DNA of 64,000 nt from IMGVR_UViG_3300030102_006934:186001-250000, one strand, 5' to 3'. Counted from the stretch's first letter, positions 3,155 to 64,000 are shown. A program made the numbers and translations. The notes: generated from the letters alone by a model not told the origin.

Positions 3155-3163
3155 AATAATGAT

Positions 3164-48400: not shown

Positions 48401-50789
48401 TTCGGTTGGTAGAAAATACGGTTACTACCCTTACGTGGGGTCAATCAAAGATATTGGTACGCCTAAATCTGAAAATATAACTGAGGAAGAACTATCTAAA
48501 TTAGGGAGATGGATTACAGTTGCTAAAAGTGAGGATTACGCGGCCCAAGTTGATGAAGATGGGTTGCCTTTGGAAAGTGAACAATTAGACGGTACAGTAA
48601 TATCCGTGGGTACTCTATCTAATAAAGCTAAAGAAGATAGAAAAGTAGTGGTAACTTTATTTAGAAACCATGAGTATGTTGCACAAAATACAAAAGTTGA
48701 AGATGACCCATCTTTATCTTCTGAATTAGAATTAACTAGATTACCAATTCAACCCTTACCAGAAAGAATAGGACCAGAACCACCAGGAACACCCAAAACC
48801 ATCTTGATACCAGACGCGATAGATTTTCCTTCCGATTCCATCACCTTCTCACCAAACGGTGACTTGTTACAAGATGGATTACCAGTCATGGAATACCGTG
48901 AAGAACCTAAAAAAACTAGAAAACAAAGAAGGTTAGAAAAAAAGAAAAATAAAAACCAAGAGTACGAAAAAGAAGTTGTTACTTCGGCTGGTACAAAAAC
49001 TATAATGACAAAATACGGTGAAATAATAGAACTACCAACTACTGAAGCTTTATTGAAACAAAAAGCTGTAGAAGACCAGATTCGAACAACTGAAGAGATA
49101 GCTAGAAGAGCGGCAGATGGTGGTGTCTCTGAAAACGTAAACGATGATGAAATTAGTGAAAACCCTATTATCACTGAAAAAGTTGTTAAGAGAGTAGTTC
49201 AAAAATTATTTAGGGAGTGTGAATACTTTGAAAAAATAAAAGTATCAGATCCTTTTTTATATGAAACTATAGAAGAAAAAGTTAAATTTTTTCATCCAGC
49301 TTTTCATTCTATCACACCAGAGGGGTTAAATAGTAGGTTAACTTTCTTACAACAATGTATGAGACAAGGGCCAAGTTTAAGAGACTCAAACAATATTACA
49401 CAAAACATGGCTTTTGGTAAACCACCCGTTTTAGTACTAAGAATAGGTGATTTTTATTACACTAAAATAATACCAGATTCATTAAACATAAATTACGAAC
49501 CACTACAATGGGATATGAACCCTGAAGGTGTTGGTGTACAACCTATGATTGCCAAAGTAGATTTAAACTTTAGTATGGTGGGGGGCTCTAGTTTAGACGG
49601 ACCAATAAATAGATTACAAAACGCAGTATCTTTTAACTTTTTCGCCAATACTTCTGTTTATAACCCTAGAAGATATTATGATGGTAATATAGCTAATAGA
49701 AGTGCTTTCAGTACGATGGAAGAAAAACTAGAGGAAGATGCTAATAAAATAGAGTTGAATAATCAAAATATAGGATTTGGGGCTTTCAAAACACAAGACC
49801 AAGCCTCCTTAGAATTCTATGGTAAAGATACGGGTGGTCAACAAAGTAATGTTAAAACAGACGATAAAGATAAAGGTGATAAAAATGAAGATGAAGAAAT
49901 TAAAGCAACATTCTATTTTAATGATTTAGGGATATCACCTAAAGGAGCTTCAATACCAGAAGAACAAAAAATAAAAACTAATATTTTAATAGACCCTAAT
50001 CAACCAAATAAACCAATAGATGAAGCGTTATTAATGGGTACCACTGGTGAGGTTGAAGTTGAGGGTGTAGACCCAACAACTAGTGTTTTTTACGCTGGTG
50101 GATTTATGGGGACTGAATCTGACCAAGAAGAAATATCTAATATGTATCCAGGTTCAACCACACCACTAATAGAGTTAAGGTCAGATTTGTTTTATAGAGT
50201 TCAGTACAAAGAAGTGGTGGAACTACCATTGGGTGAAGAAGTTTTAACAGGTAATATAAACCCACAAGTTAATATTAATGAATCCAATATAAAAGCAAAA
50301 TACCCAGATGGGTCTGGTGGTATTTTATTAGATACAATAACATTCGGTATAACTAACGAGGGTAGAAAACAAGGTTGGTATGTATCCCCAAGAGTTGAGC
50401 TTAAAATGACTTATCCAGATGGTGAAGTTAAAACTCTACAAGATAAGGCTTATATTGTATCCACCACATCATCAATCGAAAGTTTAGGTAAACCATATAC
50501 TGATAATACGGTTATCACTACAGACGTAGCAATGGTATTAACTTTTGAAGTTCAAAGATACTACTTAGATTGGTTTGATTTAGATGGTTTTGAAAATGGT
50601 AATTACAAATTAGACATTACTTGGATATATGCTAGAGAAGTTACAGAAGAAACACAAGGAATAGACCCTACTAAAAACGTTGGTGACTTAGTGATTAAGG
50701 AGTATACAGAAAGTTTAGTATATGACTTGTATAGTGAAGATTATGTTGACACAACCCTAATAGGACCACAACCAAACCCAACACCTTAA
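45483..50789 (+). CDS. Baseplate/tube-initiator-like protein with inserted OmpA-like peptidoglycan-binding domain
   Basis: Tube-like halves FPPYDINFTD..ANWDS..LGRAEPVYTY and KPPVLVLRIGD..SLNINYE flank IKLEGFCS...YNQMLSIDR...DRKV. Confidence 0.6.
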   Translation: MPSINPENYNINSFNSQTLGPITVQDFRDYVLKHNLPGLDPVLASNGIDNYGLNIYAPLLFNPSDTVNDLPNLSEVAFIPSPINDNTSPRPDNKKRNLFTNEEPFIGSETEEEIFSVTTRSLEDPGSIDSWVEGAGFSTDVFSVRNFNNLTNNEYGPEYVETYNDPDQPLESTGYKQYPSDAGGDVIGPVIARSLGFSPENFINFPSPLQDTAKERRIEELTNRVKLNFVDDTVGRLNLDPLGLLAGQSIFLPDYTITKRKGILGKAAQFAASLGGFNWPRSPLKGGKNPDLGSNAFQADLLDFTGKAQRKILYKNVYSSKYTPELLTKGYDLENAGADTLSAGGAESLGEGKKTPNNYLKLNKKLNKDESTRERRVGNWLRDLTTKGDQTLQPDSDRLTTPSDPFVTMGVTGQYPSIDNLDPESTFVELDFITPPSYQYGDENYYPNKTTLKPSQEDSDSGLNSFTHTTPGTKNLFYWQNRDRSVAKRGLLDFTQKMINNTDANGYRGGAKFIGRFDSDSNLKDVQVDVGDGDVRNVPRSKDVSKGNLLRGADGDHYCRSWTTRNPYQNHYDLIRRSRLYRAGGGSDTGPFPGPYQSTLEDNGHVKIAPYSSDDFDIDADVTNARGIFNSGNDVKRYMFSIENLAWADATEKIALETCEIGPNGGRIMWFPPYDINFTDNTTANWDSTVFLGRAEPVYTYNHTERKGTLSWSIITDHPSVLNKLKSPLEGKILEFFAGCGVDVTKFYEEIKEEILRIEIPVIEDEDEDDDEDEVITPTPVIKKEPPVKKLSFYFRNAGPGDGSAKGRPGVGRTIEKEIAVNYDTGKFSSDGVGKNQISKTKTGDYLMLNENRWFTTEGDESKGIDALIDFLATEDGQEWSIKLEGFCSAASTDTYNQMLSIDRVQRVYEYMAKAVKERGETGGSGYTYIPENFKKAHFGYKCTDGTDDKRTSYRKQKDAELGMDSRKCAECFSVGRKYGYYPYVGSIKDIGTPKSENITEEELSKLGRWITVAKSEDYAAQVDEDGLPLESEQLDGTVISVGTLSNKAKEDRKVVVTLFRNHEYVAQNTKVEDDPSLSSELELTRLPIQPLPERIGPEPPGTPKTILIPDAIDFPSDSITFSPNGDLLQDGLPVMEYREEPKKTRKQRRLEKKKNKNQEYEKEVVTSAGTKTIMTKYGEIIELPTTEALLKQKAVEDQIRTTEEIARRAADGGVSENVNDDEISENPIITEKVVKRVVQKLFRECEYFEKIKVSDPFLYETIEEKVKFFHPAFHSITPEGLNSRLTFLQQCMRQGPSLRDSNNITQNMAFGKPPVLVLRIGDFYYTKIIPDSLNINYEPLQWDMNPEGVGVQPMIAKVDLNFSMVGGSSLDGPINRLQNAVSFNFFANTSVYNPRRYYDGNIANRSAFSTMEEKLEEDANKIELNNQNIGFGAFKTQDQASLEFYGKDTGGQQSNVKTDDKDKGDKNEDEEIKATFYFNDLGISPKGASIPEEQKIKTNILIDPNQPNKPIDEALLMGTTGEVEVEGVDPTTSVFYAGGFMGTESDQEEISNMYPGSTTPLIELRSDLFYRVQYKEVVELPLGEEVLTGNINPQVNINESNIKAKYPDGSGGILLDTITFGITNEGRKQGWYVSPRVELKMTYPDGEVKTLQDKAYIVSTTSSIESLGKPYTDNTVITTDVAMVLTFEVQRYYLDWFDLDGFENGNYKLDITWIYAREVTEETQGIDPTKNVGDLVIKEYTESLVYDLYSEDYVDTTLIGPQPNPTP

Positions 50790-50844: not shown

Positions 50845-51168
50845 ATGGGAACTAGTTATTTTGATAGGTACGGTAATTTTAAAAATAAGGATAAATTTAG
50901 TTTTATACCCTTTATAAAGTTATCAAAAAAACCAACAGATTTAAATATAAAATGGAAAGAAACCAAAAGACTAGATAAAGTTTCAAATGACGTTTATGGG
51001 TCACCCTTTTATGGGTGGTTAATATTACTAGCCAACCCAAAGTATGGTGGGTTGGAGTTTGATATTCCAGATGGTGTTTCACTAAGGATACCATTCCCAT
51101 TAATGGAAAGTTTACAAGACTACCAAAAAAAAGTAGATAATTATATTTTACAAAATGGCAGAGAGTAG
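50845..51168 (+). CDS. Baseplate wedge protein (gp53/LysM-like)
   Basis: RLDKVSNDVYGSPFYGWLILLANP...LRIP. Confidence 0.8.
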   Translation: MGTSYFDRYGNFKNKDKFSFIPFIKLSKKPTDLNIKWKETKRLDKVSNDVYGSPFYGWLILLANPKYGGLEFDIPDGVSLRIPFPLMESLQDYQKKVDNYILQNGRE

Positions 51169-54100
51169 TACACAGTTTGGTTGTAATGACTTAGCTAAAA
51201 ATGTTTCTGGTTGTGAGGAGAATGGTAACATAAGACTAATCAACCCAAACGCACAAATAGATGAGGAAGGTGTTAAAAATGAAGACCTAGTCATGTATGC
51301 GACATTAAGAGCTAGAGTAAAAAACAAAAGTTTATTATTAGACAAAGACGATGAGTTATGGAATGAATTGACTTTTATAAAAGCCAAGTCAAACGCTCCA
51401 GGCCAAGCCGCTGAAGGTTCTGCAAACGCTACACCAGAAAATACTAGTTTTTTAACCACTAATTGGACCGACATAGGTTCATCAGATATGTTATTTGAAA
51501 AAGATCATGAAACTTTTGGTATAACTAATATAAATGTGGATATACAGGCAGACTTTATACCAAAAATAAGTATAGATTTCGTAGATTTAAGAGGAGCCAC
51601 TTTATTTGAACAAGGATCTTGTTCACCTTATGCTAGTTTCTTTCACCAACCGTACCCAGTATTTGAGTTAGTACTTAAAGGTTATTATGGTAGTCCGATA
51701 AAATATCAGTTGATGGTCCAAGACTTTAAAACATCTTTTGATGCTAGTACTGGTAATTACGTTTCTAAAGCTGAAATGATAGGTTTTAACTACGCCTTCT
51801 TAGGTGATATTATGTTAGCTTACGTTTTAGCTGTACCCTATATAGAAGGGTCAGATGAGATACTAACATCAATATACCAAGACTATTTAAATTATTATAA
51901 AGAAAGAGGTTTTAATGAGGGTAGGAATAAATTCGAACCCTTAAGTGCTGATGATAACTCACCATTAACACTTTATAATTACGTAAGAAAATTACAAGAA
52001 CTAGAAGGCCAAGGTAATTCAGACAAAGGACCTATTGCAGAAATACAAAGTTCATCTGAGTTATTTACCATAGAAAACCTAGATAAGTTCCAAGAGATAT
52101 TAAATGATATTGATGAATTTATAGATAAAGATTTTGATGAGTCTTGGAAAAAAAAGGGTGGTAAGAATGTAAATAATTTATATTACTATGGTGATGGTTC
52201 AGTTGGTGATACTGGTGTAAACACTGATAATTTATTGGACGTTTATAGTAATTTTTTTGGTTCGGTTGGTAAGATAACCACCTCAATAGCTGTTTATAAT
52301 GATTTAGTCGGTGATTCTGGTTCTTCATCTTTAACACCAATAATATCAAACCCAAAAGTAGAAAAAACATCTACTTACTTGTTAAGTTTAGATTTAGAAG
52401 GTCTAAAGAATGAAATGAATAATAAGTTGGATGAAATTTCTTTGGACTTAAAGACTAAAAGAAAAGAATTTATAGATTTAGCTAATGCTAAAATAAAGTC
52501 TTCCGTAGGTTTCGTACCCACTATAAGAAGTTTTTTTACTACTTTAATCGCTAACACAGAATTATTTTTAGAACTACTTAGGACCACGTCTTACGATGCA
52601 GAACAATATCATCAAAAAAACAAAGATTCTGATAAAATAAGGTTTAAAAATGAGGAGGACGTTCCAGTATCGGATATTGTTTATGCTTGGCCTACATATA
52701 CAGAAATAAGACAAAGTGGGACTAGAGATGAAACGGAAGTAGAAGTTTACCCAGGAACTAACCCAAAGTTCCAAAATTGGCCTGAAGTAATATTCGTAGA
52801 AAACCTATTAAAAGCTCTCACTGAAATGAACAGAAAGTTACAAGAAGGTGATGGAGAGGAAGTTAATCCAGAAGTAGATCCATATGATGGTATACCAGGT
52901 AGAGATAACTATTTCCCAGTCAATGCCATGGAAACACCTCTAGGTGCTAGAGACGCTAATAATAGTTATTATAACCTAAACTCAAAAGATGCTGTCATAA
53001 GGTCTTTGGGTGAAAGATTTATACTATACAGTAATGTTACAGGTGTTAACTCTAATTTTTTAAATACATCGGTGATAGCTTCAGCTAAAAATAGTTTTAA
53101 CGAAACACTATTATTAAGGGGTAAATATGCTATACAACCCGTAGAATTTAACTTAAATAAATCCTTTAATCCCTCTAAAAAATATCAGATATTTCCAGGT
53201 ATAGAAAAATTAAATAACGGCGTTTTAACACCTTATTTTAGTGCTGGACATTATTTTAAACCTAAAAAGTTTGGTGGTGAAGATTTAAACATTAATACAA
53301 ATCTAACTTATAGCCAAAACTATAAAAAAATAGGTGGTATCAAAGGTTACCCATATATAGATGATAGAAAATTCTTCGGAAACTACGTAAGTCCTATGGG
53401 TTTACCTTTATCTAGAGAAGCTAGTGAAACTGAAGATACTTATAACAATGATTGGAATAATATTGGTTATTTAATGGAAGGTGATGGTGAGGTTAAAAGT
53501 AGTAATAACCTAACTTACGAAGAATTAACACCATCATCTGAATTACGTACACATGTAATTAGTTTCAAAATACCTAAAATAACCCAAACAGATTTTAGAA
53601 CAAAATTTGAAAAAAGTTTTAAATATGAGGGTAATTTAGGTAATAAAAAAAGTTTTACTAACGATGAAAATGTGGTTGTTCTAGAACCACTTTATTACAC
53701 TAAAAAAATGGTAATAATATTTGTTGATAAGAATACCACAAAACCAGGTTACAGTATTGAAAATCACATATCACAGGTACCAAAAAATGTTAGAGACAAA
53801 GCGTGGATTATATTATGTACTAATTATGTTGGTTACGATTATAAGGGTAAAAATAAATCTGCTAGAGCAGAGTTTTTAAGTAATTATCTTGAGACTGACA
53901 ATTATCTACAACTAGTAAACATAGTTGTAGAAATACTTTATAAAGCAAAAGGAAACCCAACCCGAAAGCTGACTTCAGAAGAAATAGACTTATCATCAGG
54001 TATAGATTCATTTTTTGATATAACCTTATTAGGGTATGGATCTGGTTCTCTTGAAGCCTTTTTATATGGAGACACCCAAGAAACTTTAGACAATGTAGAA

Positions 54101-57100
54101 ATAGTTGGTTTAGCTGACCCTAATCTATTTGGTGTTTCTGGGACAAGTTATGCTGATATAAGTGGAGACCTTACTATAATTAATGAATTTGGAGTTGCCA
54201 ACCGTTTTGAAAAACAAACATTAGAAACAGTAAAACAACATTTAAATTTTCCACAAAAAGGGTTTAGAATGGTTTGGGGTAGTGATACCCAAGTAAATGT
54301 ATTTGGGGGTGATGAAACACCCAATCAGTACCAAAAATTAGAAAATTATATAAAAAATACTTCATCTACGGGTAAGTCTGGAAAATCTTCTAAAATAAGT
54401 GGATTAAATAAAAGTGAGGCGCTGAAATCTTGGTTTGAAAATTACGGTGAAGAAATAGTGGAAGATATACAAAAAACAGACACTTTACTGTTCCCTTCCG
54501 AAACCACTGTTTCAAAATCAAAACCTAGTTCAGAAAACAACTTTGAAGTTGGTAGAGAATTTATACCAGAAAAAGAATTTGCAATTTGGGCAGGCCTCGG
54601 TTTAACCGAAAGACTATCAAAAAATTGGGAGTATCTAGGTAAATTAGAGGCACACAATATGTATAACTCTTTAAGTAATCAAAATTTAATTGGTAATTTA
54701 CTCAGTTCTCTAGATAACGTTAAGGAATTACATAAACAAATAATAGAGAAATTAGGTATCACCACATCAGACATATATGACAACAATTACTACAATCAAT
54801 TATATAGATATAACAAACCAATTACGATAAATAGAGTTTCAAAAGAAAAGGGTGGTGCTATAAAAGTTCTACCTAATATTCATGACATGAAAGGATCTGA
54901 CTTAGTTAGGCTAACTAGGTTTGACAACATAGCTGGTTCAGGTTGGGATTTCGGTAAGGAATCACCTGTCTATTTTTGGTATAAAAATGCATCTGGTAGA
55001 AGAGGTTTCGGTATCGACCCAGAATCTACTTTTATCACGTCTAGTGTTTTCGAAGATTTAAATAAATATTATGGGTCAGAACCTAAAGGTGATAATAAGT
55101 TAGATGTTAGTAAAAATAGCACACAATACGTGGATGGTTTGTTAGCTAGAGATTTTAATATAAGAGAAGGTACACAAACATTAATGCATAGGTATTCTAA
55201 GGGTATGGCCAGAACAGGTTTATTCAATACAGAGGGCACCTTTTTAACAAACGGTTCTAGAGCTGGTATAGATGGTTCTGTTGACAATTTCGGTGAACCC
55301 ATGATAAACACGTTTACACAAACAAATAATACTATTAGGGATAAATTATTAAGTTTGGACGTATGGCCTAATAATAACTTTTCTTATAGTAGTTTTGACA
55401 ATATAGGTGGTAGATTTTTGAAAATAGGTGGTGAGTTTACTAGAAAATACATGAAAACACCGAGTGAATTCACACTTACTACTACTGGTGATAACCACAA
55501 ACCCACAAATGTAAGAGCTAAAAAATCTGGGTTAAACCCTTTAGGAACCACCAATATAACTTGGAATACACTAAATTTAAATACACCAATATATGAAACA
55601 TACACCTCAGAGTCGGCTAAATTAAGAGATAGTTTAGGTAAAGATGAGGATTCTAGTCCAAATTGGAGGAATTATAGAGCATCCGTATTATCTTACAGTA
55701 ATTGGGCCAGCAGTGAAATAACTAAAGTGGAAGAAGCAAAAGAATCTGCTAATGCTGAAGGTAATAATGATAAATTAAAGGTATCTTCTGGTTTTGGTTT
55801 AAACGCTTCTCTTTCACCATTCTTTAATGCACCCATGAGTAGAAAACTAGAAAATTTAAATTTCTTTAATCAAGGTGCTACCATAACTGAGTCACCGTGG
55901 TGGAGACACAATATGCCATCTAATCAATCAGGTTCAAATTATTGGAGTGATAATAAAACTTATTACTCATTCTTTGGGGCTGGTGTATTCAATGAAGTAG
56001 AAGGTGATGATTTTGTTAATAACGCAAACGATGGTAGTACCTATAATAGACAACCTTCTGTAACCAATAAACTTAAAGGTGATGGTGATAGTGGTGGACA
56101 AGCAAAGTTTATCAGTAAGGCACCTCTTTTTGTTGGTATTGGTAATGACTTAGATAGTTACAACACTACTTCTAAATTTTTTCCATCTGGTAATGGGTCT
56201 CAATTTAATTATTTTGGTACATTGGGAACATCTGAAGATAAAATATATAAGGTAGAAAATGGTGATAATGGTTTTGTTGACCAAGGTACTTTAAGTCCAG
56301 TCGCTCAACAAAATTACTATGGCAGTTCCGTTGACTGGTCAGTAAAACTAAATAGAAAAAATCAATATTTAGGTAGAAAATACCAATTAACAAATCATAA
56401 CAAAGATGATTTTAGTATCACAAGAGATTCAAACTCTGGAACTTTTGGTGCAGATGGAGAAATAGATTTAGGTAATATAACGGTAGACCCAAACTTAACT
56501 AGTTATAATAAAACTAAAGCTTGGAAAGGGTCTTTAGCTTATTTATTCCTATCCAACCAATTCCACAAACCATGGACAGGTTTATACACTAATACTAATA
56601 AAAATTTAGGACCCCAAGGTTATTTTGGGATGGCATCTTTCAACGCTCAAATGCCTAGACATTCCGTATTAATGTTAGGAGCAGTATTATGGAGAATGAG
56701 AGAGTCAGGATTATTAGAATCTGATGATAATAAATGGAATTTACCACCAGAAATAACAAATGGTTTAGACCCAGTTAATTACCCTATAACACCTAACAAG
56801 CTTGATTTAGCATATAGTAATACCAGTATAGGTATAGACACTAAACAATTTTTATTGAGATCAATAAATAAGAACAGTTCCATAACCACAGAAGAATATG
56901 TGGATGCAATAAACACAGAATTAAATCCATTAGATTCTGTTTGGCCAACAAATCATAATGTCAGACCACCACAGATATCTCTAGTATCCAATCCAAGTGG
57001 TGATAATAACGGAGGTTATTTATTTGGAAATAATAAATTCATGACCTTCCCTAGAGCTGATGAGTGGCCAGTACCTAATTTAGGTATGATTGGAGCCTAT

Positions 57101-60100
57101 GATTTTTTCGCTGACAAAAAGGCTAAAAATCCATTTAAAAATCAATACAGAATATTTACTCCAATATTAGCTAATTCAGGCATGAACGCTTTAAGGTATA
57201 ACACACAAGATTTTAGGTTTAGAAACACCCAAAAACAGGTAGACGCATTTAAACAACAAATCTTAGAAGTATTAAAAGCACAAGAATCAGAATTGAACGC
57301 TGTGGCAAATGAAGCTGCAGATAATACAGCACATAATGCTAGGGTAGCTGGTCAAACTGACGAAGCTGCAGAAGCCGCAGGACAATCACAGGTTAAAAAA
57401 GCTGAAGAATTATTAAATGAGGTTAAAGAGAAAGCTGATAAGAAAGCTTTAGAAGCTGCTGTTGTGACAATGGATAGTATATTAAAAAAGATACCTAATT
57501 TAGCTGGAACTGAAGAAAGTTTTACTAGATTAACCTCTTTAGTTTTCGAGGGTAGAGAATTTATTAATGGTGCACTACTCAATACCGTAGATAATAGTAT
57601 ACTTGAACAAGATATATACCTAAAAAATGATACTATTAAAAGAATTATAGATCCATCTTTTGGTGTTGAAATCGCTGATTTCAGTACTATGACTTATTTT
57701 AGGATGGATCAAGTGGATGATGGTAGAAGTTCATTATGGAAACAAACCGATGATGTGGCAGCTTACAACGAAAGTTCTTCAGCTTTTCCTACAATTCGTA
57801 ATCTATATAAGTCTAATGAAGGAATCAACACACAGATTAATGGTGAAGAGGAGGCAATTGTCGCCAAATTAGCTGGTGCTGAAGTACCGAGTACACAAAA
57901 TGTTATTAAAACGGTTATAGATACACCAATGGAATTGTTAAATATTACAGAAAATGGTGTATTCATTAGGCAGGTTGAGGGTCAGTTAATAAAAGCTTCA
58001 GTAATTAATATAGAGGAGGTTATTGGTACTGAAAAAACCGTTATATATAGAACTTACGAAGGTAAGGCTACTTTTGATTTATACGCCAATAGAACGGGTG
58101 AACTACTAAAAAAAGGTGAAACAGATACACCCTACTTTCTAACCCAAGATTTACTAGATTCAGACGGAGATGTTTTGTATGAAGCTGGTACAGGGTATAA
58201 GGAATGGCCTATAACAGAAGGTGAAGTAAATATAACACAAGATAGTGAAAACAAGTGGAAATTAGTAACCCCAAGAGTATTAGAAATACAAGGATATACC
58301 CCAGTTAGTGGTTCTAGAAAATTAACCAATGAATTTGATCAAAAAAGATACATTGGTAAAAGCTCAAATATAAAAATGCCAAATGGTGTATCAGTCCCTG
58401 GGGGTAATACTTATATTGGTGATAGAAGTATAGAAGCACAATTGAATATATGGCGAGACAATTCTTGGGGTATTGATTGGATTGAAAGTGATGGCTCTCC
58501 AAATGGTAGTTCAGAGACGGTGAGGTCGGGTTACCATAAATATAGTGGATATTATAAAGTATTTACAGATGGATCTTATGTGGTTTACAAGTCGGGTAAA
58601 GTAAGAGCAGTTGGTTCCTCCGATTTTGATGGTGTAACTATTAAAGCCACTAAATCTAGAGCTTTAAAGTTAACATTAGAAGGTTTAACTTCGGGGGAAA
58701 AGACTTTATTAAATTTAGAGACAGCTTATGCTTATGGTGATAATGACGATGCAGTAGATACAGTAGATTTAGTAAAAAGTGAGCTTACTTTATTAAATGA
58801 CCCAGAAATAGACCAAGATACTTATAAAGATTCTTTAACAAGAAGGATACAAAGAAGAAGTTCTTATAGGGGGTATCTAAGGGGTTACCTACCTATGGGA
58901 CCAGAAATATGGTTTATGCCCACAGAAGTTAAAAAAATATTTATAAAAGAGTTTGAAGATTATGTGGGTGACATGAATAATTGGGTAGACCCAAACGAAT
59001 CAACCGATAATTTTGATTACGCATTACAAACTATAGACCCATTAAACTTCCCAAGATACGAGAATAATAATAAATTCGGTGTTTTTAAAAATGAAATCAT
59101 ATACCCAACAGCTTTTGAGGAGATAGGGACAGTTGGAACTGACGCTCCATCAGTATTGAGGTTAAGTACAAATAAGATAAGAGAAGCTTATGGTGATGGT
59201 TTAGATTTAACCAAAGATAAAATGCCTTTAATCCCTCAACCACTATTAGATTTTTATAATTTATTCGAAATTAATAAGGCAACAATACCAATAAATCAAT
59301 TACGAAAATACAGTAAATTCCAAACCCAAATAACAAGAGATTTTAATAAAGGAGATACTCCTGAAATATACCCTTTTATTGAACAAAGAACTAAATCATT
59401 TGATTCCAAAGGATTACCAGCAAATTCAAAGTTAAATGATGTATATAACTCTTTGTTTGGATCTTATTATTTTGTAACATCTACCACCCCTAGAACTTTT
59501 AGTGGTGAGTTTCCACTACAGGAAATAGATGGCGAAATGGTAGAAACCACACATGATTATTTTACCTTTAATAAAAGAGAAATGTTTGCCTTCTTAAAGG
59601 GGTTCGTCAAAGAATTGTCGTCACCAGAAATAAAAGGAGCTTTCGAGCAGTCTTTAAAAGATGATTATATGAACGAAATACAAGGTGAAGTATTAGGTGC
59701 TGGACAAGATGATGATATTAGACTATCTATTTATAGGTCACTTAAAACATTATATGATAAATATATTTCAGGTTCTGCCGCGGGACAATCAAGTGGAAAG
59801 GGTGAAGATAAAACAAGAATGTTTTACAACCCAATAGGTAGGAATAGATTATTTATCGATCATTTTGTTTTTGTTAATAGAGTGAATGCTGACATTGGGG
59901 ACGTAGCTTTAGTTAAATTAGAAACAGTGAACAACCTTTTCCAAAATACACAAAATAGTATTTTCGAAATTTCATCAGATGTTTTAAGTAGTAGTAATTT
60001 TATATTTTTACCTTTACCTGGTTACGTAGATTTAAGTGCTGGTTTAACTAAAACTAATGTCGATAGAAATACTGAATTTCCTAACTTTGTGGCTGAACAA

Positions 60101-63100
60101 GCTAACAACATGTTTAGACCTATATCAGACCAAGGAACATTTAGTGATATAGATAGTAAGTTAGGCTCACCAATGTGGTACTCTATGTATATAGGTGGTG
60201 TTTCTAGACAACTAAAATTAAAAAATGATGATAACCAACCAGGGTGCTTAACAGAACTAAATATCAACGGTAAAAAAGATCAGTCAGATGATGGATTCTT
60301 AATGAGCCCATTTCCAAACTCAAAACCAGCTCCACCAGATTTTGTTAGTACTACTAATCCAGACAATACCCTAACTAATAGTAATTCCACCTCAAAAGGT
60401 ATTACAGCTTTCAAAGTAAGGTTTGGAGCGGAAAATCAAAGTCACTTCACTGGGATAAATTTAGACCAGTTAGAATTTAAGGATACTAATGAAAGTATTG
60501 TAGCAACACAAGCAATAGCTGAAAGAGCTTCCAATGGTGGTGCTGGTGGTTTTATCGCTAAAGGACAAGACCTATATCAAATATTCTTAAATAGAAGTTA
60601 TACCGCTAAAGTAGAGTCATTGGGTAATGCGATGATTCAACCATTCCAATATTTTCAATTAGAAAACGTACCGATGTTCTTTGGTAGTTATCTTATAACT
60701 AAAGTTTCTCATAATATTAGACCTAATCACATGAAAACTAGTTTTGAGGGGGTAAGAATGAGTCACGCAACAGTACCAATAGTAGAAGACTTTATTTCTA
60801 CATTTAACATTAAACCTTCTAAAGAGGGAGCTAAAAGAAAATCTTTAAAGGGTACTGGTAGTAATTCTAACAAAGCTAGTAATTATAGTTATAGTTCCTC
60901 ATCAAGTTCAACAACAGGTATGAAATCAGTTAGTGGTTTATATAGTCCAATAGAAATAGCGACAACCACTGTAACAGACGAGCAAGGTAACACAAAAAAT
61001 ATAACCAAGAAAATAAGGGAAGGTTTAGTAGCTAGAGGTTTTAATTTGAATCAAGTACTCACAAAAGGTGATTCTAGAAAATATACAGATGCAAATGGAA
61101 ATGTAATAGATGTTAAACAAATAAAAGATGGTTCTTTTTATAATGAAGTTACTAGAATAAATGGTAAGAACTGGATGGCTGGAGATTGGCCTAAATATTC
61201 AGGTAGTGAAGAAAGAGGGCCTAAAGGTATTCAAATACATTGGACCGCTGGTTGGACTTTAAAACAAACAACTACTGTCTTAGCTAATAGAGGTTTAGCC
61301 TATAGTATATTAATAGGTGAGGATGGTAAGGCTTATCAAATCACCAATCTAGATAAAAAAGGTGCCCACGCTGGTTGTGTTAGTGACACAGTAGCTTGTC
61401 ATAGAGGAATGAACTCTAAATCTTTAGGTATTTCTTATGTAGGTGGTATTGAAGGAGGTACTGAAAGATCAATAAATAATGGTTATTTAAGAACTTGGGA
61501 AGATTGGCAGACAGAAAGTAAAACAGTACCTTTTTGTCCGAAAGGTACTAAAAAGAACAAAGAGGGTATTGCTAGTTGTTCCGATACTGAAGCAACAGAC
61601 CCATATGACGTAGTATCTTCTAGGGGTAGGGTATTCAAACCAAAAGGCCAATGGGAATCTTTAGTAGATTCTATATTAATGATGAAAGTTAAGTTCCCCA
61701 GAATGCAGTGGATTACTGGACACAACTTTACCAACGCTGGTAAAGCAGACCCTGGTATAGGGTTTCCATGGGACAAATTAGTTAGAGACCTAAAAACAAG
61801 GGGATGGAACAAGGAAGACGCTGACGATGACCCAATTATCGTTACTGAATGGCCAATCACCAGAGGAAAAGGTAATAAGGCAGGTCAAACAATAGTGGAC
61901 GGTGGACTTTACCAACAAGATAGTATTGATGCTTTAGGGGAAGAATTAAAATCTGCTGGTGTAGAGTATGGTGCCGCACAAAATGAATATGACATAGATG
62001 ATGTCTTAGTAGCTCAAGAAGAAAGGGAAGATGACGCTCAAGAAGGCCAAACAGTAGACCAAATAGCTTGTAGAATATTAAATGGACCATTTAAATATGG
62101 ACCTAACGATACTGGTAAAGGTTTAATAGAAGATTTAGGTTTAACAAAACAGCAAGCAGCAGGTGTTGTTGGTAATCTACAAGGTGAGTCAGGATTAATA
62201 CCAGATAGAATACAAGGAGCTGGTACTAAAACGGGCACTATTGACCAATCTGGAAAAGGTGGATATGGTTGGGCTCAATGGACCTTCCCTAAATTAAAAG
62301 AAGATTTTATTGCTAGTGCGAAAGCGGTAGGTGTTGACCTAAATAAAACACCAGCTGATATGGATATCAATTATAAGTATTTGGTTGAGTTCATACAATC
62401 AAGTGGTAAGTTAGCGATACAAAAAGATAAATACGGTAATATAGCTACAGAACTGGGCATAGATAAATGTGGTGGTTTGGAAGGGTTTAAAAAAACAAAA
62501 ACAGTAAGAGAAGCTACAGTTTATTTTATGGGATGTTATGAAAGACCAGCAGTTCAAGACGAAAAAGAAATAGTAAAAAGAACAACCTTTGCTAATCAAG
62601 CCTACCAAACTTGTGAATCATCAAATACGGCGGTGACAAATGATGATACTGAAACCGTAACTGAAAATAGTATTATAGTACATTCTAATGTTAAAAACTT
62701 AAATGAGGCATTAGGTATAGAGGGTCCTTACACAGCTAACTACCCACCACCAGCTGGAGCAATACCACAAAGTACGATAGACAAATTAGTTCTATTGAAT
62801 GTTGAATATAAAAATCATTTAGGACAAGAGTGTAGGGGACAATTAGTTACTTATAAAGTTGCGGAAGAGAAAATGAAAAATATATTTAAAAAACTCAAAC
62901 AAATAGAGTACCCAATAGAAAAATGTGATCTACCAGTTAAATATAATTGGAATGACGAAGACTTAATGAATAAAAACATAACGAATAGTTTTAACTATAG
63001 AGCAATAACGGGTGGAAACGGTATAAGTCCACATGGTACAAAACCAGTTTTAGATTTAAACCCACTATTTAATCCATACTTTAAACCAGGGTATATCAAC

Positions 63101-63451
63101 AACGATAAGTCCCAAGGGGTATCACCAGGACCATATAGTGAATTAACACCATCTAAAACACCTTATAAAACTGTTGAATCTTATTGGAAAAATACAATAC
63201 CACCCACTTTTGGGTTATTTGGTAGTTCATACCCAGTAGCCTTTAACTCAGTTACCAAGACAATGAATGTGGTAGATAAAAAATGGATACCAAATGGTGA
63301 AGAAATAACTACAACAGGACCCAACGCGGCAGGTAAAAAATCTAAAATAGTACAAATATTTAAAGAAAATGGTTTTAATAGATGGGGTGGAGCTTGGACA
63401 GACCAAATAGATGGACAACATTTTGAGATTGCTAACACTGGTAATATATAA
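51155..63451 (+). CDS. Giant baseplate hub (gp27/VgrG-like) with C-terminal amidase, tail lysozyme and M15 peptidase domains
   Basis: Hub N-part (FGITNINV..IDFVDLRG..LKGYYG) and C-part (SYTAKVESLGNAMIQP..GSYLITKVSH); Amidase_2 about 61220-61790; Phage_lysozyme2 about 62130-62610; M15 about 62780-63430. Confidence 0.8.
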   Translation: MAESSTQFGCNDLAKNVSGCEENGNIRLINPNAQIDEEGVKNEDLVMYATLRARVKNKSLLLDKDDELWNELTFIKAKSNAPGQAAEGSANATPENTSFLTTNWTDIGSSDMLFEKDHETFGITNINVDIQADFIPKISIDFVDLRGATLFEQGSCSPYASFFHQPYPVFELVLKGYYGSPIKYQLMVQDFKTSFDASTGNYVSKAEMIGFNYAFLGDIMLAYVLAVPYIEGSDEILTSIYQDYLNYYKERGFNEGRNKFEPLSADDNSPLTLYNYVRKLQELEGQGNSDKGPIAEIQSSSELFTIENLDKFQEILNDIDEFIDKDFDESWKKKGGKNVNNLYYYGDGSVGDTGVNTDNLLDVYSNFFGSVGKITTSIAVYNDLVGDSGSSSLTPIISNPKVEKTSTYLLSLDLEGLKNEMNNKLDEISLDLKTKRKEFIDLANAKIKSSVGFVPTIRSFFTTLIANTELFLELLRTTSYDAEQYHQKNKDSDKIRFKNEEDVPVSDIVYAWPTYTEIRQSGTRDETEVEVYPGTNPKFQNWPEVIFVENLLKALTEMNRKLQEGDGEEVNPEVDPYDGIPGRDNYFPVNAMETPLGARDANNSYYNLNSKDAVIRSLGERFILYSNVTGVNSNFLNTSVIASAKNSFNETLLLRGKYAIQPVEFNLNKSFNPSKKYQIFPGIEKLNNGVLTPYFSAGHYFKPKKFGGEDLNINTNLTYSQNYKKIGGIKGYPYIDDRKFFGNYVSPMGLPLSREASETEDTYNNDWNNIGYLMEGDGEVKSSNNLTYEELTPSSELRTHVISFKIPKITQTDFRTKFEKSFKYEGNLGNKKSFTNDENVVVLEPLYYTKKMVIIFVDKNTTKPGYSIENHISQVPKNVRDKAWIILCTNYVGYDYKGKNKSARAEFLSNYLETDNYLQLVNIVVEILYKAKGNPTRKLTSEEIDLSSGIDSFFDITLLGYGSGSLEAFLYGDTQETLDNVEIVGLADPNLFGVSGTSYADISGDLTIINEFGVANRFEKQTLETVKQHLNFPQKGFRMVWGSDTQVNVFGGDETPNQYQKLENYIKNTSSTGKSGKSSKISGLNKSEALKSWFENYGEEIVEDIQKTDTLLFPSETTVSKSKPSSENNFEVGREFIPEKEFAIWAGLGLTERLSKNWEYLGKLEAHNMYNSLSNQNLIGNLLSSLDNVKELHKQIIEKLGITTSDIYDNNYYNQLYRYNKPITINRVSKEKGGAIKVLPNIHDMKGSDLVRLTRFDNIAGSGWDFGKESPVYFWYKNASGRRGFGIDPESTFITSSVFEDLNKYYGSEPKGDNKLDVSKNSTQYVDGLLARDFNIREGTQTLMHRYSKGMARTGLFNTEGTFLTNGSRAGIDGSVDNFGEPMINTFTQTNNTIRDKLLSLDVWPNNNFSYSSFDNIGGRFLKIGGEFTRKYMKTPSEFTLTTTGDNHKPTNVRAKKSGLNPLGTTNITWNTLNLNTPIYETYTSESAKLRDSLGKDEDSSPNWRNYRASVLSYSNWASSEITKVEEAKESANAEGNNDKLKVSSGFGLNASLSPFFNAPMSRKLENLNFFNQGATITESPWWRHNMPSNQSGSNYWSDNKTYYSFFGAGVFNEVEGDDFVNNANDGSTYNRQPSVTNKLKGDGDSGGQAKFISKAPLFVGIGNDLDSYNTTSKFFPSGNGSQFNYFGTLGTSEDKIYKVENGDNGFVDQGTLSPVAQQNYYGSSVDWSVKLNRKNQYLGRKYQLTNHNKDDFSITRDSNSGTFGADGEIDLGNITVDPNLTSYNKTKAWKGSLAYLFLSNQFHKPWTGLYTNTNKNLGPQGYFGMASFNAQMPRHSVLMLGAVLWRMRESGLLESDDNKWNLPPEITNGLDPVNYPITPNKLDLAYSNTSIGIDTKQFLLRSINKNSSITTEEYVDAINTELNPLDSVWPTNHNVRPPQISLVSNPSGDNNGGYLFGNNKFMTFPRADEWPVPNLGMIGAYDFFADKKAKNPFKNQYRIFTPILANSGMNALRYNTQDFRFRNTQKQVDAFKQQILEVLKAQESELNAVANEAADNTAHNARVAGQTDEAAEAAGQSQVKKAEELLNEVKEKADKKALEAAVVTMDSILKKIPNLAGTEESFTRLTSLVFEGREFINGALLNTVDNSILEQDIYLKNDTIKRIIDPSFGVEIADFSTMTYFRMDQVDDGRSSLWKQTDDVAAYNESSSAFPTIRNLYKSNEGINTQINGEEEAIVAKLAGAEVPSTQNVIKTVIDTPMELLNITENGVFIRQVEGQLIKASVINIEEVIGTEKTVIYRTYEGKATFDLYANRTGELLKKGETDTPYFLTQDLLDSDGDVLYEAGTGYKEWPITEGEVNITQDSENKWKLVTPRVLEIQGYTPVSGSRKLTNEFDQKRYIGKSSNIKMPNGVSVPGGNTYIGDRSIEAQLNIWRDNSWGIDWIESDGSPNGSSETVRSGYHKYSGYYKVFTDGSYVVYKSGKVRAVGSSDFDGVTIKATKSRALKLTLEGLTSGEKTLLNLETAYAYGDNDDAVDTVDLVKSELTLLNDPEIDQDTYKDSLTRRIQRRSSYRGYLRGYLPMGPEIWFMPTEVKKIFIKEFEDYVGDMNNWVDPNESTDNFDYALQTIDPLNFPRYENNNKFGVFKNEIIYPTAFEEIGTVGTDAPSVLRLSTNKIREAYGDGLDLTKDKMPLIPQPLLDFYNLFEINKATIPINQLRKYSKFQTQITRDFNKGDTPEIYPFIEQRTKSFDSKGLPANSKLNDVYNSLFGSYYFVTSTTPRTFSGEFPLQEIDGEMVETTHDYFTFNKREMFAFLKGFVKELSSPEIKGAFEQSLKDDYMNEIQGEVLGAGQDDDIRLSIYRSLKTLYDKYISGSAAGQSSGKGEDKTRMFYNPIGRNRLFIDHFVFVNRVNADIGDVALVKLETVNNLFQNTQNSIFEISSDVLSSSNFIFLPLPGYVDLSAGLTKTNVDRNTEFPNFVAEQANNMFRPISDQGTFSDIDSKLGSPMWYSMYIGGVSRQLKLKNDDNQPGCLTELNINGKKDQSDDGFLMSPFPNSKPAPPDFVSTTNPDNTLTNSNSTSKGITAFKVRFGAENQSHFTGINLDQLEFKDTNESIVATQAIAERASNGGAGGFIAKGQDLYQIFLNRSYTAKVESLGNAMIQPFQYFQLENVPMFFGSYLITKVSHNIRPNHMKTSFEGVRMSHATVPIVEDFISTFNIKPSKEGAKRKSLKGTGSNSNKASNYSYSSSSSSTTGMKSVSGLYSPIEIATTTVTDEQGNTKNITKKIREGLVARGFNLNQVLTKGDSRKYTDANGNVIDVKQIKDGSFYNEVTRINGKNWMAGDWPKYSGSEERGPKGIQIHWTAGWTLKQTTTVLANRGLAYSILIGEDGKAYQITNLDKKGAHAGCVSDTVACHRGMNSKSLGISYVGGIEGGTERSINNGYLRTWEDWQTESKTVPFCPKGTKKNKEGIASCSDTEATDPYDVVSSRGRVFKPKGQWESLVDSILMMKVKFPRMQWITGHNFTNAGKADPGIGFPWDKLVRDLKTRGWNKEDADDDPIIVTEWPITRGKGNKAGQTIVDGGLYQQDSIDALGEELKSAGVEYGAAQNEYDIDDVLVAQEEREDDAQEGQTVDQIACRILNGPFKYGPNDTGKGLIEDLGLTKQQAAGVVGNLQGESGLIPDRIQGAGTKTGTIDQSGKGGYGWAQWTFPKLKEDFIASAKAVGVDLNKTPADMDINYKYLVEFIQSSGKLAIQKDKYGNIATELGIDKCGGLEGFKKTKTVREATVYFMGCYERPAVQDEKEIVKRTTFANQAYQTCESSNTAVTNDDTETVTENSIIVHSNVKNLNEALGIEGPYTANYPPPAGAIPQSTIDKLVLLNVEYKNHLGQECRGQLVTYKVAEEKMKNIFKKLKQIEYPIEKCDLPVKYNWNDEDLMNKNITNSFNYRAITGGNGISPHGTKPVLDLNPLFNPYFKPGYINNDKSQGVSPGPYSELTPSKTPYKTVESYWKNTIPPTFGLFGSSYPVAFNSVTKTMNVVDKKWIPNGEEITTTGPNAAGKKSKIVQIFKENGFNRWGGAWTDQIDGQHFEIANTGNI

Positions 63452-63460
63452 CCTACCAAT

Positions 63461-63492
63461 ATTGAATTAATTAATTAATTTGTCTATCTTTG
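63461..63492 (+). promoter_or_regulatory. Bacteroidota-type promoter
   Basis: ATTG-N20-TATCTTTG, ending 5 nt before ATG 63498. Confidence 0.6.
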
Positions 63493-63497
63493 TTGAT

Positions 63498-64000
63498 ATG
63501 ATAAAAGTTATAACAAATAATAGAGATGTTGTTGAAAAGTATCTAGATTCTAACTTTTCTTTTGAAAATGGGTTTATCACAGTTTACATAGGTTGGGATT
63601 TAGCTAAAGAAAATGGGGCTTCAATTTTAAATCATAAAATAGATGAAAGAACTTATTGGACTTTTTTACCCACAGAAAAAAGAAAAGTTTTTCAAGAATC
63701 ATTAGAAGAATTTAAAAGTATTGTTTTTAATAAGATTAAAAGTGAGATAAAATTCTATAATATAAACCCATTAGACCACAACACCAAAGAAGAAGTACTC
63801 TCTTTTATTTTAGACAAACTTATCGATTTTATTGGATATTTATATAAAGAAAAAATCTATTTTTATAAAAATAAAACAGTTTATCATTTAGATTTAGGTT
63901 TTTTAGATTTTATGAACTGGAACATAATTGATGAAATTACGAGTAAAATAAGTATCAGACCTTTAGAAGTGACTGATAATAACTTGGAAATAAAATATAT
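63498..64000 (+). CDS. Hypothetical protein, truncated by the window end (not in ORF track)
   Basis: MIKVITNNRDVVEKY...VYIGWDLAK...YWTFLPTEKR... stays open to the edge. Confidence 0.7.
   Translation, partial: MIKVITNNRDVVEKYLDSNFSFENGFITVYIGWDLAKENGASILNHKIDERTYWTFLPTEKRKVFQESLEEFKSIVFNKIKSEIKFYNINPLDHNTKEEVLSFILDKLIDFIGYLYKEKIYFYKNKTVYHLDLGFLDFMNWNIIDEITSKISIRPLEVTDNNLEIKY

What the first reader, a model, noticed from the sequence alone, without database searches (positions are those of the whole stretch)
51155..63451. 4098-aa baseplate hub ending in three peptidoglycan hydrolases of different chemistry
Seen: hub-like N- and C-terminal segments separated by more than 2000 aa of insertions. 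These are followed by an amidase (IHWT, AHAG, SLGISYVGG, ITGH, KADPG), a tail lysozyme (QAAGVVGNLQGESG, GYGWAQWT, YERPA) and an M15 peptidase (SFNYR, SPHG, LDLNP, WGGAW, DGQHFE). Known: T4 gp5 carries one lysozyme, and evolved VgrGs usually carry one effector. Inference: one chain cuts the glycan, amide and peptide bonds of peptidoglycan, and is among the largest hub proteins I know of. The domains are candidate enzybiotics.
Basis: partly seen in the sequence, partly recalled or inferred. Interest (0 to 1): 0.75.

Follow-up and report, generated by a model that had tools for sequence, protein, structure and literature searches.

The report
Giant phage hub with three lysins
A marine jumbo phage encodes a 4098-residue tail-tip (baseplate hub) protein ending in three different cell-wall-cutting enzymes; it is an extreme member of a large, unstudied family of giant hubs that swap such enzymes.

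Summary
Window 51155-63451 (+) is one uninterrupted 4098-aa ORF. Full-length collinear homologues of about 70% identity occur in independent assemblies, and identical sequence occurs in several marine metagenomes, so it is not an assembly artefact.

The hub reading is supported by predicted structure.
- Residues 46-213 form a tail-tube-like barrel.
- Residues 2894-3204 match the C-terminal two thirds of gp27/gpD/VgrG-type hubs. In an unbiased scan of 48,161 PDB chains, the best 29 matches and 32 of the best 33 are hub or tail-tip proteins.
- About 2,680 residues of unknown function lie between the two parts.
- Synteny fits: tape-measure-like gene, a 1768-aa gene, a gpX/gp53-like small gene, then the hub.

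After the hub core come three domains, all above Pfam thresholds and with their catalytic motifs present:
- Amidase_2
- a phi29-gp13-like tail lysozyme
- an M15 peptidase

There is no gp5-like OB fold or beta-helix. The nearest known kind is therefore a Tal-type hub (gp27-like core plus C-terminal lysin), not T4 gp5 or VgrG.

The family is large: 1648 clusters at 50% identity and at least 540 IMG/VR contigs. It has no match in deposited phage genomes. Its C-terminal lysins are swapped among members. Only this small clade carries three. Enzyme activity and virion location are untested.

The parts
50845..51168 (+). 107-aa small baseplate protein of the gpX/gp53 (LysM-like) type. Its end overlaps the start of the giant gene by 14 nt.
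   Evidence: PHROG 7145 'baseplate wedge subunit', E 6e-7. Atlas feature search scores 0.94-0.95 to Phage_tail_X, Phage_gp53 and LysM clusters. The same 107-aa gene precedes the hub in homologue contigs.
51155..63451 (+). The giant hub gene, 4098 aa.
51290..51793 (+). Hub domain I, aa 46-213: a tail-tube-like beta-barrel.
   Evidence: AF2 model, overall pLDDT 79.5. VIA-align Z 7-8.8 to tube, Dit and hub N-terminal domains, e.g. Mu gp44 3-93, Pvc8 2-135, VgrG1 5-126.
51794..53074 (+). Helical-bundle insertion, aa 214-640, conserved across the family at about 410-630.
   Evidence: AF2 secondary structure. Only unspecific helical matches such as flagellin and YaxA. Conservation.
53075..59833 (+). 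Insertion of unknown fold and function, aa 641-2893. It has a few islands conserved among larger family members, no internal repeats, and an Ala/Glu-rich stretch near aa 2140-2230.
   Evidence: No Pfam, PHROG, NCBIfam, PDB-sequence or Atlas match. Conserved islands. Self-comparison.
59834..60766 (+). Hub core, aa 2894-3204: the rest of the gp27/gpD-like fold, including the second tube-like barrel at aa 3082-3204.
   Evidence: AF2 model, pLDDT 67 overall and about 90 for the last barrel. Hub-dominated top matches in Foldseek, VIA-align and the unbiased scan. AFDB names GPD, Vgr, gp44/GpP and tip attachment J.
60830..61201 (+). Ser/Thr/Gly-rich linker and a short unassigned segment, aa 3226-3349.
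   Evidence: Read from the sequence.
61202..61849 (+). Amidase_2 domain (N-acetylmuramoyl-L-alanine amidase type), aa 3350-3565, carrying an insertion of roughly 60 residues relative to the shorter family members. The motif residues H3362, H3523, K3530 and D3532 are present.
   Evidence: Pfam above cut-off. The family profile matches AmpDh2, AmpD and T7 lysozyme over both halves.
62105..62608 (+). Phage_lysozyme2 domain (tail lysozyme), aa 3651-3818, with Glu3678 in the GNLQGES motif.
   Evidence: Pfam 74-77 bits. Aligns to the N-terminal lysozyme domain of phi29 gp13 (3csr), with Glu3678 opposite chain residue 45.
62762..63442 (+). M15-type zinc peptidase, aa 3870-4096. It has the H3960-x6-D3967 and D4086-x2-H4089 motifs and a long internal insertion.
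   Evidence: Pfam Peptidase_M15_4, 39-45 bits against a cut-off of 25. Motifs read from the sequence.
42594..45449 (+). Tape-measure-like gene, 951 aa. Context.
   Evidence: PHROG 167, E 3e-19.
45483..50789 (+). 1768-aa protein of unknown role between the tape measure and the hub. It is conserved in synteny and has a weak OmpA-like region. Context.
25332..28148 (+). Tail sheath gene. Context showing a contractile tail.
   Evidence: PHROG 23, E 5e-50. tblastn to T4-like sheaths.

Best explanation
The gene encodes the central baseplate hub of a roughly 380-kb marine myovirus distantly related to T4. The hub fold (gp27/gpD-like, two tube-like barrels per chain) is split. Barrel I lies at residues 46-213. 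The remainder lies at residues 2894-3204. An insertion of about 2,680 residues of unknown function sits between them. By analogy with solved hubs, the protein should form a trimer that caps the tail tube below the tape measure (inferred). After the hub core the chain continues through flexible linkers into three peptidoglycan hydrolase domains: an Amidase_2, a phi29-gp13-like lysozyme and an M15 metallopeptidase. On sheath contraction these tethered enzymes would be carried into the periplasm and open the cell wall locally for the tail tube by attacking the glycan strand, the MurNAc-L-Ala amide bond and a peptide bond. This is the role of a tail-associated lysin (Tal) rather than of an endolysin. 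Shown here: the ORF, the fold similarity, the synteny, the domain identities, the presence of the catalytic motifs, and the swapping of lysin modules among relatives. Inferred: trimer formation, virion location, enzyme activity and bond specificity, and use at entry.
For: The ORF is real and recurs in other assemblies. Hub fold: in the unbiased VIA-align scan of 48,161 chains, the best 29 matches and 32 of the best 33 (Z 5.1-8.4) are hub or tail-tip proteins, aligned over their residues of about 125-350. The same result comes from Foldseek and VIA re-alignment and from AFDB cluster names. The N-terminal barrel matches residues of about 2-130 of the same hubs. Synteny is sheath, tube, T4_baseplate-like gene, tape-measure-like gene, 1768-aa gene, gpX/gp53-like gene, hub. 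It is identical in a homologue contig. No other gp27, gpD or gp5 Pfam match exists in the 380-kb genome. All three enzyme domains score above Pfam cut-offs and show the expected motifs. Across 126 complete family members, 60 carry a recognised peptidoglycan hydrolase behind the hub core (lysozyme2, Amidase_2, M23, VanY, M74, M15_4). Twenty carry two and 4 carry three. In three relatives the hub ORF stops just after the core and a separate Amidase_2 gene follows about 15 nt later. A separate 233-aa ORF with weak similarity to the giant's amidase region lies elsewhere in the genome and could serve as the endolysin.
Against: Fold-match Z scores (up to 8.4) are in the range the tool calls middling, and the C-core model has only moderate confidence (pLDDT 67). 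The case rests on the near-uniformity of the matches and the ranges covered, not on any single score. No sequence-level match to hub families was found. The N-terminal barrel alone cannot distinguish hub from tube, Dit or tube initiator. No spike (gp5-like) protein was identified; the only lead is a weak 17.8-bit OB-fold hit in a 384-aa ORF outside the window. The 535-aa ORF at the position T4 gives to gp27 was not folded, so a second hub-like protein cannot be excluded. Amidase_2 and M15 both carry long insertions, and no activity data exist.
Confidence: 0.8

Rival explanations
1. The hub-like parts are real, but the enzyme domains are mainly peptidoglycan-binding anchors or degenerate modules, so the chain does not cut three bond types.
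For: The Amidase_2 and M15 Pfam matches cover only part of each model because of long insertions. PGRP-type Amidase_2 domains that bind without cutting appear among the PDB matches. The neighbouring tail proteins carry weak OmpA-like, possibly wall-binding, regions.
Against: The motif residues are all present (H3362, H3523, K3530, D3532; E3678; H3960, D3967, D4086, H4089), and the amidase set is conserved across relatives. Relatives replace these modules with other catalytic hydrolase families such as M23, VanY and M74.
Confidence: 0.1
2. The protein is not the hub proper. It would be another tail-lumen or tail-tip component (tape-measure-like, tube initiator, or ejected protein) that merely contains tube-like barrels, and the true gp27 equivalent is a different gene, for example the 535-aa ORF at 40966-42573.
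For: Tube-like barrels occur in many tail proteins. T4 places gp27 between gp26/gp51 and gp29, which is where the 535-aa ORF sits (T4 gene order from my own knowledge). phiKZ-type phages have giant tail proteins with lytic domains (my own knowledge).
Against: The C-core matches not just a barrel but residues of about 125-350 of hubs, covering several domains, and hubs dominate the top of an unbiased scan. A separate tape-measure-like gene lies upstream. The 535-aa ORF shows no profile similarity to either hub segment.
Confidence: 0.08
3. The giant ORF is an assembly or gene-calling artefact that joins separate genes.
For: In three relatives the amidase is a separate gene immediately after the hub gene, so hub and lysin can exist apart.
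Against: There is no stop in 12.3 kb. Full-length collinear homologues at about 70% identity come from independent assemblies. One 33x contig and identical fragments from runs of two other studies cover the stretch without alternative joints. An IMG/VR relative at 85% identity also has all three domains in one ORF (L008).
Confidence: 0.02

Closest known systems
Tal-type hubs (tail-associated lysins) of siphophages and some myophages, e.g. Staphylococcus phage 80alpha gp59
   Same: Both have an N-terminal gp27-like hub module with two tail-tube folds, forming a quasi-sixfold trimer, followed by a C-terminal cell-wall hydrolase domain (PMC7048315, read). The gene lies after the tape measure. 80alpha Tal (6v8i_AE) and NF5 tail-associated lysin (9m7n_A) appear among the fold matches.
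   Different: 80alpha Tal has 633 residues and one hydrolase domain. This protein has 4098 residues, the hub fold is interrupted by about 2,680 residues, and three different hydrolases follow. The phage has a contractile tail and is distantly T4-like.
T4 gp27-gp5 cell-puncturing device
   Same: The gp27-like fold is shared (T4 gp27 residues 137-371, Z 8.3). Both place a lysozyme at the tail centre. The phage's sheath and gp25, gp6 and gp26-like genes are T4-related.
   Different: In T4 the lysozyme sits on a separate protein, gp5, with an OB fold and a beta-helix. Here there is no Gp5_OB, Gp5_C or T4 gp27 Pfam match. The enzymes are fused to the gp27-like protein, and the lysozyme is of the phi29-gp13 type.
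phi29 gp13 tail-knob lysin
   Same: The lysozyme domain aligns to the gp13 N-terminal domain (3csr) with the Glu of the E-S motif conserved. From my own knowledge, gp13 combines a glycosidase with a metallopeptidase, so multi-activity tail lysins are known.
   Different: gp13 is a small protein that is not a hub and has two activities (lysozyme plus M23). This protein has three, and they are fused to the hub.
Evolved VgrG spikes of type VI secretion
   Same: Both have a gp27-like module followed by a C-terminal enzymatic extension. VgrG1 and VgrS appear among the fold matches.
   Different: VgrG has the gp5-like OB fold and beta-helix between hub module and effector. No match to the Phage_base_V OB-fold model falls inside this ORF.
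Large tail-tip hubs with solved structures: T5 pb3 (949 aa), lambda gpJ, vB_DshS-R4C (1420 aa)
   Same: Each has the hub fold embedded in a much longer chain with added domains. All are matched over the hub part.
   Different: They are three- to four-fold smaller, come from non-contractile tails, and carry no triple lysin cassette.

Membership tests
gp27/gpD-like baseplate hub (tail hub fold) | Two tail-tube-like beta-barrel domains in one chain. | tested here: met
   Barrel I is aa 46-213 (Z 7-8.8 to tube and hub N-domains). Barrel II is aa 3082-3204 (model 343-465, matched to hub second barrels and to tail tube proteins). Both rest on predicted structures.
gp27/gpD-like baseplate hub (tail hub fold) | Overall similarity to solved hubs beyond a single barrel. 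| tested here: met
   Between 110 and 160 residues align to hub residues of about 125-350. In the unbiased scan of 48,161 chains, the best 29 matches and 32 of the best 33 (Z >= 5.1) are hubs or tail-tip proteins. Z values are at most 8.4, which is moderate.
gp27/gpD-like baseplate hub (tail hub fold) | Sequence-profile match to Phage_GPD or the T4 gp27 Pfam families. | tested here: not met
   PF05954, PF09096 and PF09097 find nothing in the genome at E <= 1. The similarity is at fold level only.
gp27/gpD-like baseplate hub (tail hub fold) | Gene placed in the tail module after the tape measure, next to a gpX/LysM-type small protein. | tested here: met
gp27/gpD-like baseplate hub (tail hub fold) | Trimer forming a pseudo-hexameric ring at the tube tip. 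| tested here: inconclusive
   The complex prediction of three copies each of the two barrels gave no verdict because the pieces did not fold.
T4 gp5 / VgrG-type spike | OB-fold domain and triple beta-helix after the hub module. | tested here: not met
   PF06714 and PF06715 give no match in the genome. The single weak PF04717 hit lies in another gene. After aa 3204 come a linker and the enzymes.
Amidase_2 (PF01510) | Pfam score above the gathering cut-off, with the zinc-binding His, His and Asp/Cys motifs present. | tested here: met
   33.9-39.7 bits against a cut-off of 26. H3362 (IHWT), H3523 (ITGH) and K3530/D3532 (KADPG) align with AmpDh2, AmpD and T7 lysozyme. The assignment of residue roles is from my knowledge of AmpD and T7 lysozyme.
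Phage_lysozyme2 (PF18013) | Pfam score above cut-off, with the catalytic Glu of the E-S motif present. | tested here: met
   74-77 bits against a cut-off of 28.2. E3678 aligns with residue 45 of phi29 gp13.
Peptidase M15 (PF13539) | Pfam score above cut-off, with the H-x6-D and D-x2-H zinc motifs present. | tested here: met
   39.3-44.6 bits against a cut-off of 25, covering only the C-terminal half of the model. SPHGTKPVLD and DGQH are read from the sequence. The meaning of these motifs is from my own knowledge.
All three enzymes | Measured hydrolytic activity and bond specificity. | not testable with these tools
   Needs recombinant domains with zymograms and muropeptide analysis.
Tape measure protein | Long helical protein whose length sets the tail length; one per tail module. 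| tested here: not met
   A separate 951-aa tape-measure-like gene lies upstream. The only tape-measure PHROG hit in the giant protein is a weak one on its lysozyme domain.

The most novel reading that the evidence does not exclude
The roughly 2,680-residue insertion may be more than decoration. It could build a large, so far unseen structure at the centre of the baseplate. As a trimer of about 1.35 MDa, the hub might take over roles that T4 divides among many proteins, such as inner baseplate, receptor contact or envelope penetration. The three tethered enzymes would then act in series to bore through an unusual marine cell envelope. This would make the family a new baseplate architecture rather than a merely enlarged Tal.
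Probability: 0.2. Interest if true: 0.75.

Novelty: new variant of a known kind. Interest (0 to 1): 0.55.

Why it matters
Hubs that carry a lysin are known, but three things here are new. First, the size: it is about three times the largest solved hub among the matches. Second, the hub fold is split by roughly 2,700 residues of unknown function. Third, three different wall-cutting enzymes sit on one tail-tip chain.

The protein also belongs to a very large family that is absent from the deposited-phage collection searched here. I found 1648 clusters at 50% identity and at least 540 IMG/VR contigs, several from phages of 320-370 kb. In this family the hub core stays constant while lysin modules (lysozyme, amidase, M23, VanY, M74, M15) are swapped, stacked, or split off as a neighbouring gene.

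That makes the family a natural experiment on how phages match entry enzymes to host walls. It is also a catalogue of compact hydrolase domains that could be expressed and tested, and a clear target for cryo-EM of jumbo-phage baseplates.

Tried and rejected
- **Sequence searches on the non-enzyme 3,300 residues.** Pfam, PHROGs, NCBIfam, PDB sequences (single sequence and profiles A1, A2) and the protein Atlas gave nothing usable.
- **Deposited phage genomes.** megablast of the gene and tblastn of the N-core and C-core found no match.
- **Complex prediction.** A job with three copies each of the two hub barrels, meant to test ring formation, returned no verdict because the pieces were not folded (pLDDT 34-38). 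It is evidence neither for nor against.
- **Separate spike gene.** Gp5_OB and Gp5_C found nothing. A 384-aa ORF outside the window has one weak OB-fold hit and no PHROG or PDB support.
- **The 107-aa upstream ORF as gp25.** Rejected. A gene with clear gp25-family matches is the 127-aa ORF about 9 kb downstream, next to a gp6-like gene.
- **The 535-aa ORF at T4's gp27 position.** It shows no profile similarity to the hub segments.
- **Internal repeats.** None were found in the giant protein.
- **tRNAs.** None in the window. The host was not identified.
Full report
**1. The observation**

Window 51155-63451 on the + strand is a single ORF of 4098 codons without a stop. It starts at the first possible start codon and overlaps the end of a 107-aa ORF by 14 nt.

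Pfam finds three domains in the last 750 residues, all above the curated cut-offs:
- Amidase_2 at 3355-3447
- Phage_lysozyme2 at 3657-3818
- Peptidase_M15_4 at 4054-4092

Nothing is recognised by Pfam, PHROGs, NCBIfam or PDB sequence search in the first 3,300 residues.

**2. Not an artefact**

The window is bases 186001-250000 of a 380,343-bp IMG/VR virus record rated 100% complete. Three proteins of 4092-4102 aa from other assemblies are collinear with the query over residues 1-4095 at 70-71% identity and have the same three domains. An IMG/VR relative at 85% identity also has all three domains in one ORF (L008).

The 3' 5 kb is held by 20 marine or seawater DNA runs from 10 studies. One run holds it in a single contig at 33x without differences. 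Runs from two other studies hold identical fragments without alternative joints, including pieces that bridge the amidase-lysozyme and lysozyme-M15 junctions.

**3. Genomic context**

Upstream genes, in order:
- tail sheath (25332-28148)
- tail tube (37378-37866)
- a T4_baseplate/"baseplate hub" protein (39942-40715)
- a 535-aa unknown ORF
- a tape-measure-like protein of 951 aa (42594-45449)
- a 1768-aa unknown protein
- the 107-aa protein, then the giant gene

The 107-aa protein hits a PHROG called "baseplate wedge subunit". By language-model features it resembles Phage_tail_X, Phage_gp53 and LysM clusters. From my own knowledge, small LysM-type proteins sit next to the hub gene in R-pyocin and PBSX-type clusters.

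Downstream lie replication genes (gp32-like SSB, UvsX, exonuclease, DnaB, RNR), and only then a gp25-like gene (127 aa) and a gp6-like wedge gene (606 aa). The same order, gene for gene, is found around a 2804-aa homologue on a 152-kb contig.

The sheath is about 30% identical to those of an uncultured 484-kb phage, a Microcystis phage, Flavobacterium phages and T4-like cyanophages. The phage is therefore a distant member of the T4 superfamily.

**4. The family**

A full HMMER scan with residues 1-640 finds 1648 cluster representatives at 50% identity with E <= 1e-3. A pattern scan finds at least 540 IMG/VR contigs encoding the C-terminal core, the largest of 318-372 kb.

Complete members range from about 1350 to 4102 aa. 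All share an N-core (query residues about 25-230 and 410-630) and a C-core (about 2856-3222). What lies between varies.

No deposited phage genome in the INPHARED collection matches either core by tblastn. BFVD holds two uncultured-phage members, one of them named only "Lysozyme".

**5. What the cores are**

Both cores were folded with AlphaFold2 using family alignments A1 and A2.

*N-core* (pLDDT 79.5). Residues 46-213 form a beta-barrel that aligns (Z 7-8.8) with tail tube proteins, Dit, tube initiators and the first domain of hubs, for example Mu gp44 3-93, Pvc8 2-135 and VgrG1 5-126. It is followed by long helical bundles. On its own this shows a tail-tube fold, not specifically a hub.

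*C-core* (pLDDT 67, about 90 in the last barrel). Protein residues 2894-3204 align over 110-160 residues with the C-terminal two thirds of many hubs:
- pyocin R2 hub, residues 126-325, Z 8.4
- T4 gp27, residues 137-371, Z 8.3
- Mu gp44, residues 120-338, Z 7.1
- P1, Pam3, AlgoCIS, Anabaena CIS, PVC, AFP, VgrG1, T5 pb3, lambda J, phi812 and others

In a scan of 48,161 PDB representatives that does not depend on Foldseek, the best 29 matches and 32 of the best 33 (Z 5.1-8.4) are hub or tail-tip proteins. AFDB cluster matches carry the names late control D, Vgr, gp44/GpP, tip attachment J and YqbQ.

The two query segments thus tile the hub fold: N-core onto hub domain I, C-core onto the rest. The insertion of about 2,680 residues sits after domain I. 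Individual scores are moderate. The argument rests on the near-uniformity of the matches, the ranges covered and the synteny.

No Pfam model of gpD, T4 gp27 or gp5 matches anywhere in the genome. The relationship is therefore at fold level, and no separate spike was identified.

**6. The enzymes**

After the hub core comes a Ser/Thr/Gly-rich linker (around aa 3236-3260), then the three domains separated by an acidic and a polar linker.

*Amidase.* The amidase profile built from 16 family members matches AmpDh2, AmpD, T7 lysozyme and PGRPs over both halves. H3362, H3523, K3530 and D3532 stand in the conserved positions.

*Lysozyme.* The lysozyme domain aligns with the N-terminal domain of phi29 gp13, with Glu3678 opposite chain residue 45. 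From memory this is the catalytic glutamate.

*M15 peptidase.* The M15 domain shows H3960-x6-D3967 and D4086-x2-H4089. The meaning of these motifs is from my knowledge of M15 peptidases.

Which glycosidic and which peptide bond are cut cannot be told from sequence.

A separate 233-aa ORF with weak similarity to the giant's amidase region lies near 15.5 kb of the genome and is a candidate endolysin. This fits an entry role, not a lysis role, for the hub enzymes.

**7. Module swapping**

I examined 126 complete family members; modules were labelled from Pfam scans plus cluster representatives, so the counts are approximate.
- 60 carry at least one recognised peptidoglycan hydrolase behind the core.
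- The Pfam tally over 108 tails is lysozyme2 28, Amidase_2 19, M23 14, VanY 13, DUF2272 5, M15_4 5 and M74 3, plus one each of Hydrolase_2, SLT and GH19.
- 20 members carry two modules: lysozyme + VanY 11, amidase + lysozyme 8, lysozyme + M23 1.
- Only the query and its three 70% relatives carry three.

In three IMG/VR relatives the hub ORF ends 31-44 residues after the core. For two of them the ORFs were listed, and a separate Amidase_2 gene of 233-249 aa starts about 15 nt later. The lysin can therefore be fused or free.

**8. Mechanism proposed**

The protein should form a trimeric hub at the tip of the tail tube, with the three enzymes hanging from the distal face on flexible linkers. On contraction the tip crosses the outer membrane and the enzymes digest the wall locally.

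This is inferred by analogy with T4 gp27-gp5 and with Tal proteins. In 80alpha gp59, residues 1-350 are gp27-like, with two tube folds in a quasi-sixfold trimer, followed by a hydrolase domain (PMC7048315).

An attempt to test ring formation by complex prediction gave no verdict.

**9. Comparison and novelty**

It works like a Tal-type hub. It is not a gp5- or VgrG-type spike, because the OB fold and beta-helix are absent. Two-enzyme tail lysins are known: phi29 gp13 from my own knowledge, and staphylococcal virion hydrolases described as having one or two catalytic domains (PMC5784253).

Three things stand out:
- the size, about three times the largest solved hub among the matches (1420 aa)
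- the split of the hub fold by a huge unknown insertion
- three different hydrolases on one chain, within a very large uncharacterised family with modular lysin cassettes

I rate it a new variant of a known kind, with interest 0.55.

**10. Limits**

The host was not identified. It is marine and probably Gram-negative, judging only from weak OmpA-like regions in neighbouring tail proteins. Activity, processing, copy number and virion location are untested.

Noticed in passing
L029:3319-4020, L066:3308-4057; also L028: In three IMG/VR relatives the hub gene stops 31-44 residues after the hub core. In L029 and L066, where the ORFs were listed, a separate Amidase_2 gene of 233-249 aa starts about 15 nt later. 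This is a fusion/fission counterpart of the fused amidase in the window.
   Followed up: partly
window 45483-50789 (+): A 1768-aa protein lies between the tape-measure-like gene and the hub and is conserved in synteny (1573 aa in L005). It has no family match except a weak OmpA-like stretch at aa 850-914. To my eye some segments look like tail-tube or tube-initiator sequence, but this is untested.
   Followed up: partly
window 6886-11505 (+): A 1539-aa ORF contains several dozen copies of a 66-nt (22-aa) tandem repeat, probably a fibrous or coiled structural protein. The repeat creates long antisense ORFs (8061-9695 and 9726-10394 on the - strand) that are probably not genes.
   Followed up: partly
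L004:2123-9144 (G000:C1 about 251.5-258.5 kb), just beyond the window end: The tail and baseplate module is interrupted. gp32-like SSB, UvsX, an exonuclease, DnaB and ribonucleotide reductase lie between the hub gene and the gp25-like (L004:9323-9706) and gp6-like (L004:9708-11528) wedge genes. A homologue contig has the same arrangement.
   Followed up: partly
L007:523-1677 (-), G000:C1 about 163-164 kb: A 384-aa ORF has a weak hit (17.8 bits, below cut-off) to the spike OB-fold family Phage_base_V. It is the only lead to a separate spike protein and has no PHROG or PDB support.
   Followed up: partly
L002:1183-1884 (+), G000:C1 about 15.4-16.1 kb: A 233-aa ORF is weakly similar to the giant's amidase region (E 4e-6 and 4e-5). 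It is a candidate endolysin of the phage.
   Followed up: no
window 42594-45449 (+): The tape-measure-like protein has weak hits near aa 600-860 to a 'tail associated lysin' PHROG and to an OmpA-like family (PdsO). It may carry a wall-binding region.
   Followed up: no
window 40966-42573 (+): A 535-aa ORF sits where T4 has gp51, gp27 and gp28. It has no family match and no profile similarity to the hub cores. It was not folded.
   Followed up: partly
window 58500-63500: Near-identical sequence occurs in 20 marine or seawater DNA runs from 10 studies dated 2014-2025, so this phage or close relatives are recurrent in the sea. The metatranscriptome runs listed from the same samples held next to none of it.
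   Followed up: partly
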